Below, one piece after another: positions 4,203 to 4,280 of a stretch of 64,000 nucleotides of DNA; the stretch's first letter is position 1, and each line of letters starts with the position of its first letter. The stretch lies in contig NC_068991.1 in NCBI RefSeq assembly GCF_001194135.2, positions 50,231,640-50,295,639 on the forward strand. Reading direction: 5' to 3'. The DNA comes from Octopus bimaculoides. Taxonomy: Eukaryota. The position numbers and the translations under genes were made by a program. Under the pieces are notes generated by a model, which worked only from the letters and a program-made list of their open reading frames with translations, had not been told where the DNA came from and ran no database searches.

Positions 4203-4280
4203 GAATTTAATCGTTTTTATTTTCTTTTATATTGCAGGTAAGATAATTTCCTTGTTCGACATACGGTAAGCAAGGTAAAT
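4203..4280 (+). promoter_or_regulatory. Candidate recursive splice site 1 (3'SS fused to 5'SS) with a 28-nt RS-exon
   Basis: TTTAAT branch-like motif (~4206-4211), then TTTTTATTTTCTTTTATATTGCAG|GTAAGA with AG at 4236-4237. Downstream donors are ACG|GTAAGC (4265/4266) and AAG|GTAAAT (4274/4275). Confidence 0.5.

What the first reader, a model, noticed from the sequence alone, without database searches (positions are those of the whole stretch)
4203..4280. Candidate recursive-splicing (ratchet) point with a frameshifting 28-nt RS-exon
The sequence shows a TTTAAT branch-like motif about 27 nt upstream of a T-rich tract and CAG, followed with zero spacer by GTAAGA (TTTTTATTTTCTTTTATATTGCAG|GTAAGA). 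A second donor, ACG|GTAAGC, lies 28 nt on and a third, AAG|GTAAAT, 37 nt on. Established knowledge: this acceptor|donor fusion plus a downstream exon-defining donor is the architecture of ratchet points in long Drosophila introns (e.g. Ubx) and of RS-exons in long vertebrate neuronal genes. The 28-nt exon is not a multiple of 3 and has TAA in two of three frames, as expected of a poison exon. Inference: this would be recursive splicing in a cephalopod-like genome, which I do not know to have been described. The site lies outside any repeat I could recognise.
Basis: partly seen in the sequence, partly recalled or inferred. Interest (0 to 1): 0.75.

Follow-up and report, generated by a model that had tools for sequence, protein, structure and literature searches.

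The report
Unproven recursive splice-site look-alike
The back-to-back "intron end / intron start" signal with a second intron start 28 bases on is really there, in repeat-rich non-coding DNA that looks like an octopus genome. Nothing I could reach shows it is transcribed, conserved or used, so it is about as likely a coincidence as a working recursive splice site.

Summary
TTAAT has its branch-type A at 4210. A T-rich tract without AG follows, then CAG|GTAAGA at 4237|4238, ACG|GTAAGC at 4265|4266 and AAG|GTAAAT at 4274|4275.

The junction alone is weak evidence. CAGGTAAG occurs 2 times against 1.2 expected. A junction this good is expected in about 5-10% of such windows, or thousands per genome. 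Adding a strong donor within 60 nt makes it rare, about 3e-4 to 4e-3 per window. That rarity was computed after the fact, with my own approximate matrices.

The window is AT-rich and full of microsatellites, SINE-like repeats, retroelement and mariner-like fragments and 11 assembly gaps. I found no exon, no annotated gene, no RNA family and no homologue. So strand of transcription, host intron and conservation could not be tested. A second, better-scoring junction at 25293 lies inside a foldback repeat, which shows that such matches arise here without selection.

My estimates: chance look-alike about 0.5, genuine recursive site about 0.28, ordinary or cryptic small exon about 0.12. If real, it would be a new member of a known kind.

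The parts
4207..4211 (+). Branch-point-like TTAAT (yUnAy); the A at 4210 is 27 nt upstream of the AG. A second candidate, TTTAT, has its A at 4219.
   Evidence: Read directly. The motif is too common in AT-rich DNA to carry weight.
4212..4237 (+). Acceptor look-alike: T-rich tract cgtttttattttcttttatattg followed by CAG. T at -5 and -6; no AG from 4203 to 4235.
   Evidence: Acceptor matrix score 11.0 bits. There are 71 acceptor look-alikes at least this good in the window on both strands.
4238..4243 (+). Donor look-alike GTAAGA directly after the AG. This would be the regenerated 5' splice site of a ratchet point.
   Evidence: CAG|GTAAGA scores 11.2 bits. Only 7 donor look-alikes this strong occur in the window on both strands.
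4238..4265 (+). Putative 28-nt cryptic RS-exon. Not a multiple of 3; TAA in frames 1 and 2.
   Evidence: No protein homology for any reading frame across it.
4266..4271 (+). Second donor look-alike, ACG|GTAAGC.
   Evidence: 10.0 bits. A GGTAAG pair 15-45 nt apart occurs 1 time against 0.09 expected.
4275..4280 (+). Third, weaker donor look-alike, AAG|GTAAAT (37-nt interval).
   Evidence: 7.0 bits. This is the only triplet of donor look-alikes within 40 nt in the window.
4155..4182 (.). Degenerate (TTA/TTG)n microsatellite remnant just upstream of the T-rich tract.
   Evidence: It matches the window's TTA/TAT microsatellites. It illustrates the low-complexity T-rich background that inflates acceptor look-alikes.
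25286..25299 (+). Second AG|GT junction on the same strand, ttttccag|GTAAGG, scoring higher than the one reported.
   Evidence: It lies in the loop of a foldback element with arms at about 24902-25267 and 25594-25946.

Best explanation
A fortuitous juxtaposition of splice-site look-alikes in non-coding DNA, with no function. The DNA is AT-rich and rich in microsatellites and repeats, either intergenic or deep intronic.

How it arises: T-rich low-complexity tracts ending in AG are common here, about one per 1.8 kb per strand. One of them happens to abut GTAAGA, and two more GTAA-type donors happen to lie within 40 nt.

Shown: the motifs, their scores, their frequencies, and the absence of any detectable gene, exon, RNA family or homologue. 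Inferred: that the site is not used.
For: The core motif is at chance frequency: CAGGTAAG 2 against 1.19 expected and TTNYAGGTRAG 2 against 0.53 expected.

Junctions of this quality are expected in 5-10% of such windows. That is 2,000-4,000 per genome of 2.3-2.8 Gb (genome sizes).

Acceptor look-alikes are twice as frequent in the real sequence as in the Markov null, 31 against 16.7. There are 71 at least as good as this one.

The only other junction of this quality in the window, at 25293, sits inside a foldback repeat. Such matches therefore arise here without selection.

No exon, domain or homologue was found:
- Pfam found only a reverse-transcriptase fragment and weak transposon hits.
- Protein searches around the site and over 4,980 aa of the most GC-rich reading frames found nothing.
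- Only 15 splice-flanked open segments exist, mostly inside repeats.
- No gene is on record for the reading frames tried.

In genomes rich in SINEs and LINEs (vertebrates), ratchet-point motifs in large introns are at most 1.5-fold enriched over the opposite strand, so most matches are unselected. This window is of that repeat-rich type. Most retroelement fragments point in the + direction; I would expect the reverse in a + strand intron. That expectation is from my own knowledge and is weak evidence.
Against: The full composite is rare under the null. It is 3.3e-4 per window with the strict criteria and 4e-3 with lenient ones, or about twice that after correction.

Every sequence-level criterion of a ratchet point is met, including TT at -5/-6 and a downstream donor slightly weaker than the fused one.

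Two junctions of at least 10/10 bits fall on the same strand, against 0.155 expected (P about 0.01).

The + strand shows G>C skew of +0.035 to +0.043 and twice as many strong donor look-alikes as the - strand, 12 against 6. Both are weakly compatible with + strand transcription.

Absence of exons in 64 kb is also what a giant intron would look like.
Confidence: 0.5

Rival explanations
1. A genuine recursive splice site, that is, a ratchet point with a cryptic RS-exon, in a long + strand intron. U2AF/U2 would recognise the tract and AG at 4237, helped by U1 at the 4266 or 4275 donor (exon definition). The upstream exon would be ligated to 4238, which regenerates a 5' splice site (exon|GTAAGA). 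That site would out-compete the 4266 donor, so that the 28-nt exon is always removed with the next intron segment.
For: The architecture matches in full. The junction scores 11.0/11.2 bits, and TT is present at -5/-6 as in 196 of 197 fly ratchet points. GTAAGA is the very sequence quoted for the Ubx microexons.

The cryptic exon is short and out of frame, and its donor (10.0 bits) is a little weaker than the fused one (11.2 bits). That is the arrangement described for fly RS-exons.

The composite is expected only 3e-4 to 4e-3 times per window by chance. A second junction lies 21 kb downstream on the same strand. G>C skew and an excess of donor look-alikes are seen on the + strand.

[quoted passage not shown] Octopus genomes have long genes.
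Against: There is no evidence of transcription, of a host gene, or of conservation.

28 nt is short compared with the roughly 50 nt given for fly RS-exons.

In repeat-rich genomes the motif is barely enriched. The companion junction lies in a repeat. The statistics are post hoc and rest on matrices recalled from memory, not trained on the species.
Confidence: 0.28
2. An ordinary small exon, or a cryptic (pseudo-)exon, of an unannotated or non-coding transcript. The exon 4238-4265 or 4238-4274 would be spliced in conventionally, at least in some isoforms, and the GT right after the AG would be incidental.
For: An acceptor plus one or two donors 28-37 nt downstream is also the signature of a micro-exon. 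Pseudoexons flanked by good sites are common in very long introns (listed, PMC7175933).
Against: The length is not a multiple of 3 and stops occur in two frames. No protein homology was found. Exons this short usually need dedicated enhancers (own knowledge). No neighbouring exons were detected.
Confidence: 0.12
3. Part of an old, unrecognised interspersed repeat or decayed minisatellite whose sequence happens to carry GGTAA-type motifs. The three donors would then not be independent events.
For: GGTAAGCAA|GGTAAATAA at 4265-4282 looks like a 9-nt tandem duplication, and GGTAAGATAA at 4237 resembles it. The window is saturated with repeats, and the other junction is repeat-borne.
Against: No second copy of 3950-4625 exists in the window. 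The similarity between 4237-4273 and 4274-4312 is not above shuffled or adjacent-segment controls, P 0.2-0.3.
Confidence: 0.07

Closest known systems
Drosophila intronic ratchet points with cryptic RS-exons (Ubx, kuz, Bx; Hatton 1998, Burnette 2005, Duff 2015, Joseph 2018; read here)
   Same: (Y)nNCAG|GTAAG(T/A) fusion, TT at -5/-6, a short out-of-frame cryptic exon closed by a somewhat weaker donor, and the possibility of several sites on one strand tens of kb apart.
   Different: Fly sites are defined by RNA intermediates, lie in introns of tens of kb and are ultraconserved. None of this is known here. The interval here is 28 or 37 nt against about 50 nt in flies. The host genome is repeat-rich, unlike fly introns.
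Vertebrate RS-exons in long neuronal genes (Sibley 2015; Blazquez 2018; summarised)
   Same: YAG|GT junction, a need for a downstream 5' splice site for exon definition, and a stop-containing exon that would poison the mRNA if included. The genome is large and rich in SINEs and LINEs.
   Different: The vertebrate cases were found from junction reads and sawtooth profiles in genes of more than 100 kb. About 400 YAG|GT junctions were examined. Here there is no gene and there are no reads.
Unselected ratchet-point motif matches and pseudoexons in large introns or intergenic DNA (Shepard 2009; DMD pseudoexons)
   Same: Good splice-site look-alikes that arise by chance in long AT-rich non-coding DNA. 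The frequency of the core motif here equals the shuffle expectation.
   Different: The added strong donor 28 nt downstream makes this example rarer than a typical random match.

Membership tests
Recursive splice site (ratchet point / RS-exon) | [quoted passage not shown] | tested here: met
   ttttatattgcag|GTAAGA scores 11.0 and 11.2 bits with approximate metazoan matrices.
Recursive splice site (ratchet point / RS-exon) | TT at -5/-6 of the acceptor (196 of 197 fly ratchet points) | tested here: met
   T at 4232 and 4233; the criterion is. It is easily met by chance in T-rich DNA.
Recursive splice site (ratchet point / RS-exon) | Downstream 5' splice site closing a short cryptic exon, weaker than the regenerated donor | tested here: inconclusive
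   Donors lie at 4266 (10.0 bits) and 4275 (7.0 bits) against 11.2 bits for the fused donor. The true strength of the fused donor depends on the unknown upstream exon. 28 or 37 nt is shorter than the roughly 50 nt typical of flies.
Recursive splice site (ratchet point / RS-exon) | Lies on the sense strand of a long intron of an expressed gene | tested here: inconclusive
   No exon, domain, homologue or recorded gene was found in 64 kb. The only hints are G>C skew and an excess of donor look-alikes on the + strand. No annotation or RNA data were available.
Recursive splice site (ratchet point / RS-exon) | Evolutionary conservation of the AG|GT core amid diverged intron sequence | not testable with these tools
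   No cephalopod genome collection is on hand. Protein-based fishing for orthologous contigs and an exact DNA scan of the metagenome collection both found nothing.
Recursive splice site (ratchet point / RS-exon) | Splicing intermediates: exon-to-site junction reads, recursive lariats, sawtooth read density | not testable with these tools
   No RNA-seq access.
Protein-coding cassette or micro-exon | Frame-preserving length, open reading frame, and homology to a protein | tested here: not met
   28 and 37 nt are not multiples of 3. TAA occurs in two frames of the 28-nt interval. No homologue was found for any frame across 3718-4497.
Interspersed or tandem repeat | Further copies elsewhere, or internal periodicity above background | tested here: not met
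   No other copy exists in the window. No tandem repeat was called. Local self-similarity is not significant. Genome-wide copy number was not testable.

The most novel reading that the evidence does not exclude
The window is part of a giant + strand intron of an octopus gene that is removed stepwise. The junction at 4237|4238, and perhaps the one at 25293|25294, would be working ratchet points. This would be the first recursive splicing shown in a mollusc or any lophotrochozoan. Its cryptic exon of only 28 nt would be shorter than the usual fly or vertebrate RS-exons.
Probability: 0.25. Interest if true: 0.45.

Novelty: not a real feature. Interest (0 to 1): 0.2.

Why it matters
If the site were used, recursive splicing would extend from insects and vertebrates to cephalopods, whose large genomes carry many long neuronal genes. 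That would bear on whether stepwise intron removal is an ancestral bilaterian solution to long introns. It would be an extension of a known mechanism, not a new one.

As it stands, the value of the case is methodological. It shows how often the ratchet-point motif arises by chance in AT-rich, microsatellite-laden DNA. It also shows that the downstream exon-defining donor carries the statistical weight, not the AG|GT fusion.

Tried and rejected
1. Finding a host gene or exon.
- I ran Pfam on all stop-to-stop reading frames of at least 45 aa from 1-47.7 kb, as concatenates. Only RVT_1 at 16010-16447 came up. The concatenates had low sensitivity, since the mariner-like pieces were missed. The last 16 kb was not scanned.
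- Ten repeat-element reading frames scanned singly gave RVT_1 plus sub-threshold zf-CCHC and HTH_48.
- 4,980 aa of the most GC-rich reading frames gave no hit.
- Exact look-ups of three window reading frames found no recorded gene.
- A splice-site-plus-open-frame enumeration gave 15 weak candidates, mostly inside repeats.

2. Fetching orthologous DNA for a conservation test.
- A protein search with all frames across 3718-4497 gave nothing.
- An exact 25-mer scan of the metagenome collection gave nothing.

3. Naming the organism.
- The retroelement reading frame hit only unnamed ENA contigs at 69-71% identity and a Nematostella protein at 45%.
- "Octopus-like" therefore remains my inference. 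It rests on composition, microsatellite load, SINE-like repeats and gap density. Gap density fits the very fragmented O. bimaculoides assembly described.

4. Idea that the three donors come from a local duplication: rejected, as the similarity is not above controls.

5. RNA families and tRNAs: none in the window. Only a chance-level miRNA match lies near the site.

6. Local inverted repeats around the site: only short, weak ones.

7. The first whole-window repeat scan was swamped by microsatellites and N runs. It was replaced by a self-BLAST.

8. One simulation hit the time limit and was rerun. A second timed out after the order-3 run, so no large order-5 estimate exists.

Full report
**What is there**

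- On the + strand, TTTAAT is at 4206-4211. Within it TTAAT fits the branch consensus yUnAy, with the A at 4210.
- The T-rich stretch cgtttttattttcttttatattg runs to 4234 and contains no AG from 4203 on.
- CAG ends at 4237, and GTAAGA follows at 4238-4243 with no spacer.
- ACG|GTAAGC lies at 4265|4266, a 28-nt interval. AAG|GTAAAT lies at 4274|4275, a 37-nt interval.
- The 28-mer has TAA in frames 1 and 2 only.
- Positions -5 and -6 of the acceptor are both T. That feature is seen in 196 of 197 Drosophila ratchet points.
- No tandem repeat covers the site. The segment 3950-4625 has no second copy in the window. The one exception is the degenerate (TTA/TTG)n tract at about 4155-4182, which matches the many TTA microsatellites.

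**What the window is**

- Base composition is about 33% G+C.
- There are 11 runs of N, 92 tandem-repeat rows (mostly microsatellites), and about 13 copies of one short interspersed element.
- Repeat-element pieces include a reverse-transcriptase fragment at 16010-16447 (RVT_1, E 9e-14). There are also four copies of a retroelement C-terminal reading frame, whose relatives elsewhere follow an RVT_1 gene. A zinc-knuckle/protease-like frame starts at 14542, and a frameshifted mariner-like element lies at 43.3-44.3 kb (weak hits).
- There are no tRNAs and no Rfam families.
- This looks like a fragmented draft of an octopus genome. The gap density fits the 713,915-contig O. bimaculoides assembly described. 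That assignment is my inference, because no named match was obtained.

**Is the motif more than chance?**

The core is not.
- CAGGTAAG occurs twice against 1.19 expected.
- TTNYAGGTRAG occurs twice against 0.53 expected, and 11 of 100 shuffles reach two.

I scored acceptors and donors with approximate metazoan matrices written from memory, not trained on this species.
- The site scores 11.0 and 11.2 bits.
- In 3,000 order-3 Markov windows, junctions at least this good occur 0.048 times per window.
- The null is well calibrated at lenient thresholds: 17 against 21, 6 against 5.9, and 2 against 1.15.
- It underestimates strong acceptor look-alikes two-fold, 31 observed against 16.7 simulated. 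T-rich low-complexity DNA explains this.

So about 5-10% of such windows should hold one junction of this quality. That is 2,000-4,000 per genome of 2.3-2.8 Gb (genome sizes).

The downstream donors carry the weight.
- Donor look-alikes of at least 10 bits number only 18 on both strands of the window.
- The 4238/4266/4275 triplet is the only one within 40 nt.
- A GGTAAG pair 15-45 nt apart is expected 0.09 times.
- The junction plus a donor of at least 10 bits at 15-60 nt is expected 3.3e-4 times per window. The junction plus any donor of at least 7 bits at 15-100 nt is expected 4e-3 times.
- After the two-fold correction, chance would still give roughly 25 (strict) to 300 (lenient) such composites per genome.

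I tested whether the three donors stem from one local duplication. The similarity is not above controls (P 0.2-0.3), so I treat them as independent.

**Context: could it be in a + strand intron?**

I could not find out.
- No exon was found by Pfam scans of reading frames from 1-47.7 kb, nor by single scans of ten repeat-element frames.
- Protein searches with all frames around the site and with 4,980 aa of the most GC-rich frames found nothing.
- Enumerating open segments flanked by splice-site look-alikes gave 15 candidates, mostly inside repeats.
- Exact look-ups of three window reading frames found no recorded gene.

The window is therefore either a gene desert or part of a giant intron.

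Indirect hints point both ways and all are weak.
- The + strand has G>C skew of +0.035 to +0.043, also after masking repeats. It has 12 strong donor look-alikes against 6 on the - strand.
- There is no T>A skew and no depletion of AATAAA (83 against 77).
- Most retroelement fragments point in the + direction. From my own knowledge I would expect the opposite in a + strand intron.

**The second junction**

The only other junction of comparable quality is ttttccag|GTAAGG at 25293|25294, also on the + strand. It scores higher, 12.4 and 12.5 bits. It lies 26 nt inside the loop of a foldback element whose arms, at about 24902-25267 and 25594-25946, are 80-90% complementary. It has no exon-defining donor other than one 5 nt away.

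Two readings are possible. Either such junctions arise in this genome's repeats more often than the Markov null predicts, or both mark one recursively spliced intron. Two junctions of at least 10/10 bits against 0.155 expected gives P of about 0.01.

**Comparison with what is known**

Fly ratchet points are (Y)nNCAG|GTAAGT fusions. They lie in long introns, are ultraconserved, and carry a short cryptic exon of about 50 nt. That exon is usually out of frame, and its donor loses to the regenerated donor. Vertebrate RS-exons follow the same logic. The site matches all sequence-level features. Its cryptic exon would be unusually short.

The defining features are sense-strand position in a long intron, conservation, and splicing intermediates. 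These were either inconclusive or not testable here.

Background rates matter. The motif is more than 20-fold enriched on the sense strand of large fly introns, and several-fold in other insects and in sea urchin. It is at most 1.5-fold enriched in vertebrates, whose introns are full of SINEs and LINEs. This window is of the repeat-rich type.

The held literature contains no report of recursive splicing in cephalopods or other molluscs.

**Weighing**

I compared per genome how many real sites might show these strict features with how many arise by chance. Real sites: a few to a few tens, if octopus has 100-1,000 recursive sites. That number is my assumption. Chance composites: about 13-100.

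| Explanation | Probability |
|---|---|
| Unselected look-alike | about 0.5 |
| Genuine recursive splice site | about 0.28 |
| Conventional or cryptic small exon of an unannotated transcript | about 0.12 |
| Unrecognised repeat | about 0.07 |

The poison-exon argument adds little, because stops are frequent in any 28-mer of this composition.

**Verdict**

The motif is real and its function is unproven. It is a reasonable candidate to check once the window is placed on an annotated genome with RNA data, and not more. If confirmed, it would be a new member of a known kind. Interest is low to moderate.

Noticed in passing
window 25286-25299 (+), within 24902-25946: A second AG|GT junction, ttttccag|GTAAGG, scores higher than the reported one. 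It lies in the loop of a foldback element with arms of about 365 nt that are 80-90% complementary. So it is either a repeat-borne splice-site look-alike or a second ratchet point 21 kb downstream on the same strand.
   Followed up: partly
window 12085-12513, 13861-14092, 21243-21638, 23939-24099, 26055-26333, 40483-40917, 46268-46514, 51962-52166, 58955-59170 and others: About 13 copies of one short interspersed element of about 200-400 bp, in both orientations. A different GC-rich (0.55-0.58) SINE-like block lies at about 4630-4935, next to a T run at about 4620-4630, some 390 nt downstream of the site.
   Followed up: partly
window 10726-11316 (+), 21937-22398 (-), 34429-35218 (+), 59224-59757 (+): Four diverged copies of a retroelement C-terminal reading frame with no Pfam match. 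Relatives at 69-74% identity in ENA contigs sit directly after an RVT_1 gene. The nearest named relative is a Nematostella protein at 45% identity.
   Followed up: partly
window 16010-16591 (+); 14542-14830 (+); 43259-44336 (+): A reverse-transcriptase fragment (RVT_1, E 9e-14). A zinc-knuckle plus DTGSD protease-like reading frame that runs into a (TA)n microsatellite. A frameshifted mariner-like transposase with a weak HTH_48 hit.
   Followed up: partly
window 1139-1285 / 1358-1504: An imperfect 147-nt palindrome (72% complementary, 72-nt loop) that looks like a MITE or foldback element.
   Followed up: no
whole window: The + strand carries persistent G>C skew of +0.035 to +0.043, also after masking repeats, and is positive in 21 of 32 2-kb bins. 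It has twice as many strong donor look-alikes as the - strand (12 against 6). There is no T>A skew and no AATAAA asymmetry. The cause was not determined; it could be transcription, replication or repeat orientation.
   Followed up: partly
window 9403-10111, 15505-15962, 18901-19169, 21649-21935, 32936-33810, 44461-44646, 61225-61842 and four shorter runs: Eleven runs of N, most of them flanked by microsatellites, so the assembly broke at simple repeats. The mean contig length of about 5 kb fits a short-read draft.
   Followed up: no
window 349|350 and 11795|11796 (+); 57190 and 16459 (-): Four further AG|GT junctions with good acceptor look-alikes (10-14 bits) but weak donors (6-7 bits). Their number is as expected by chance (6 observed against 5.9 expected).
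   Followed up: yes
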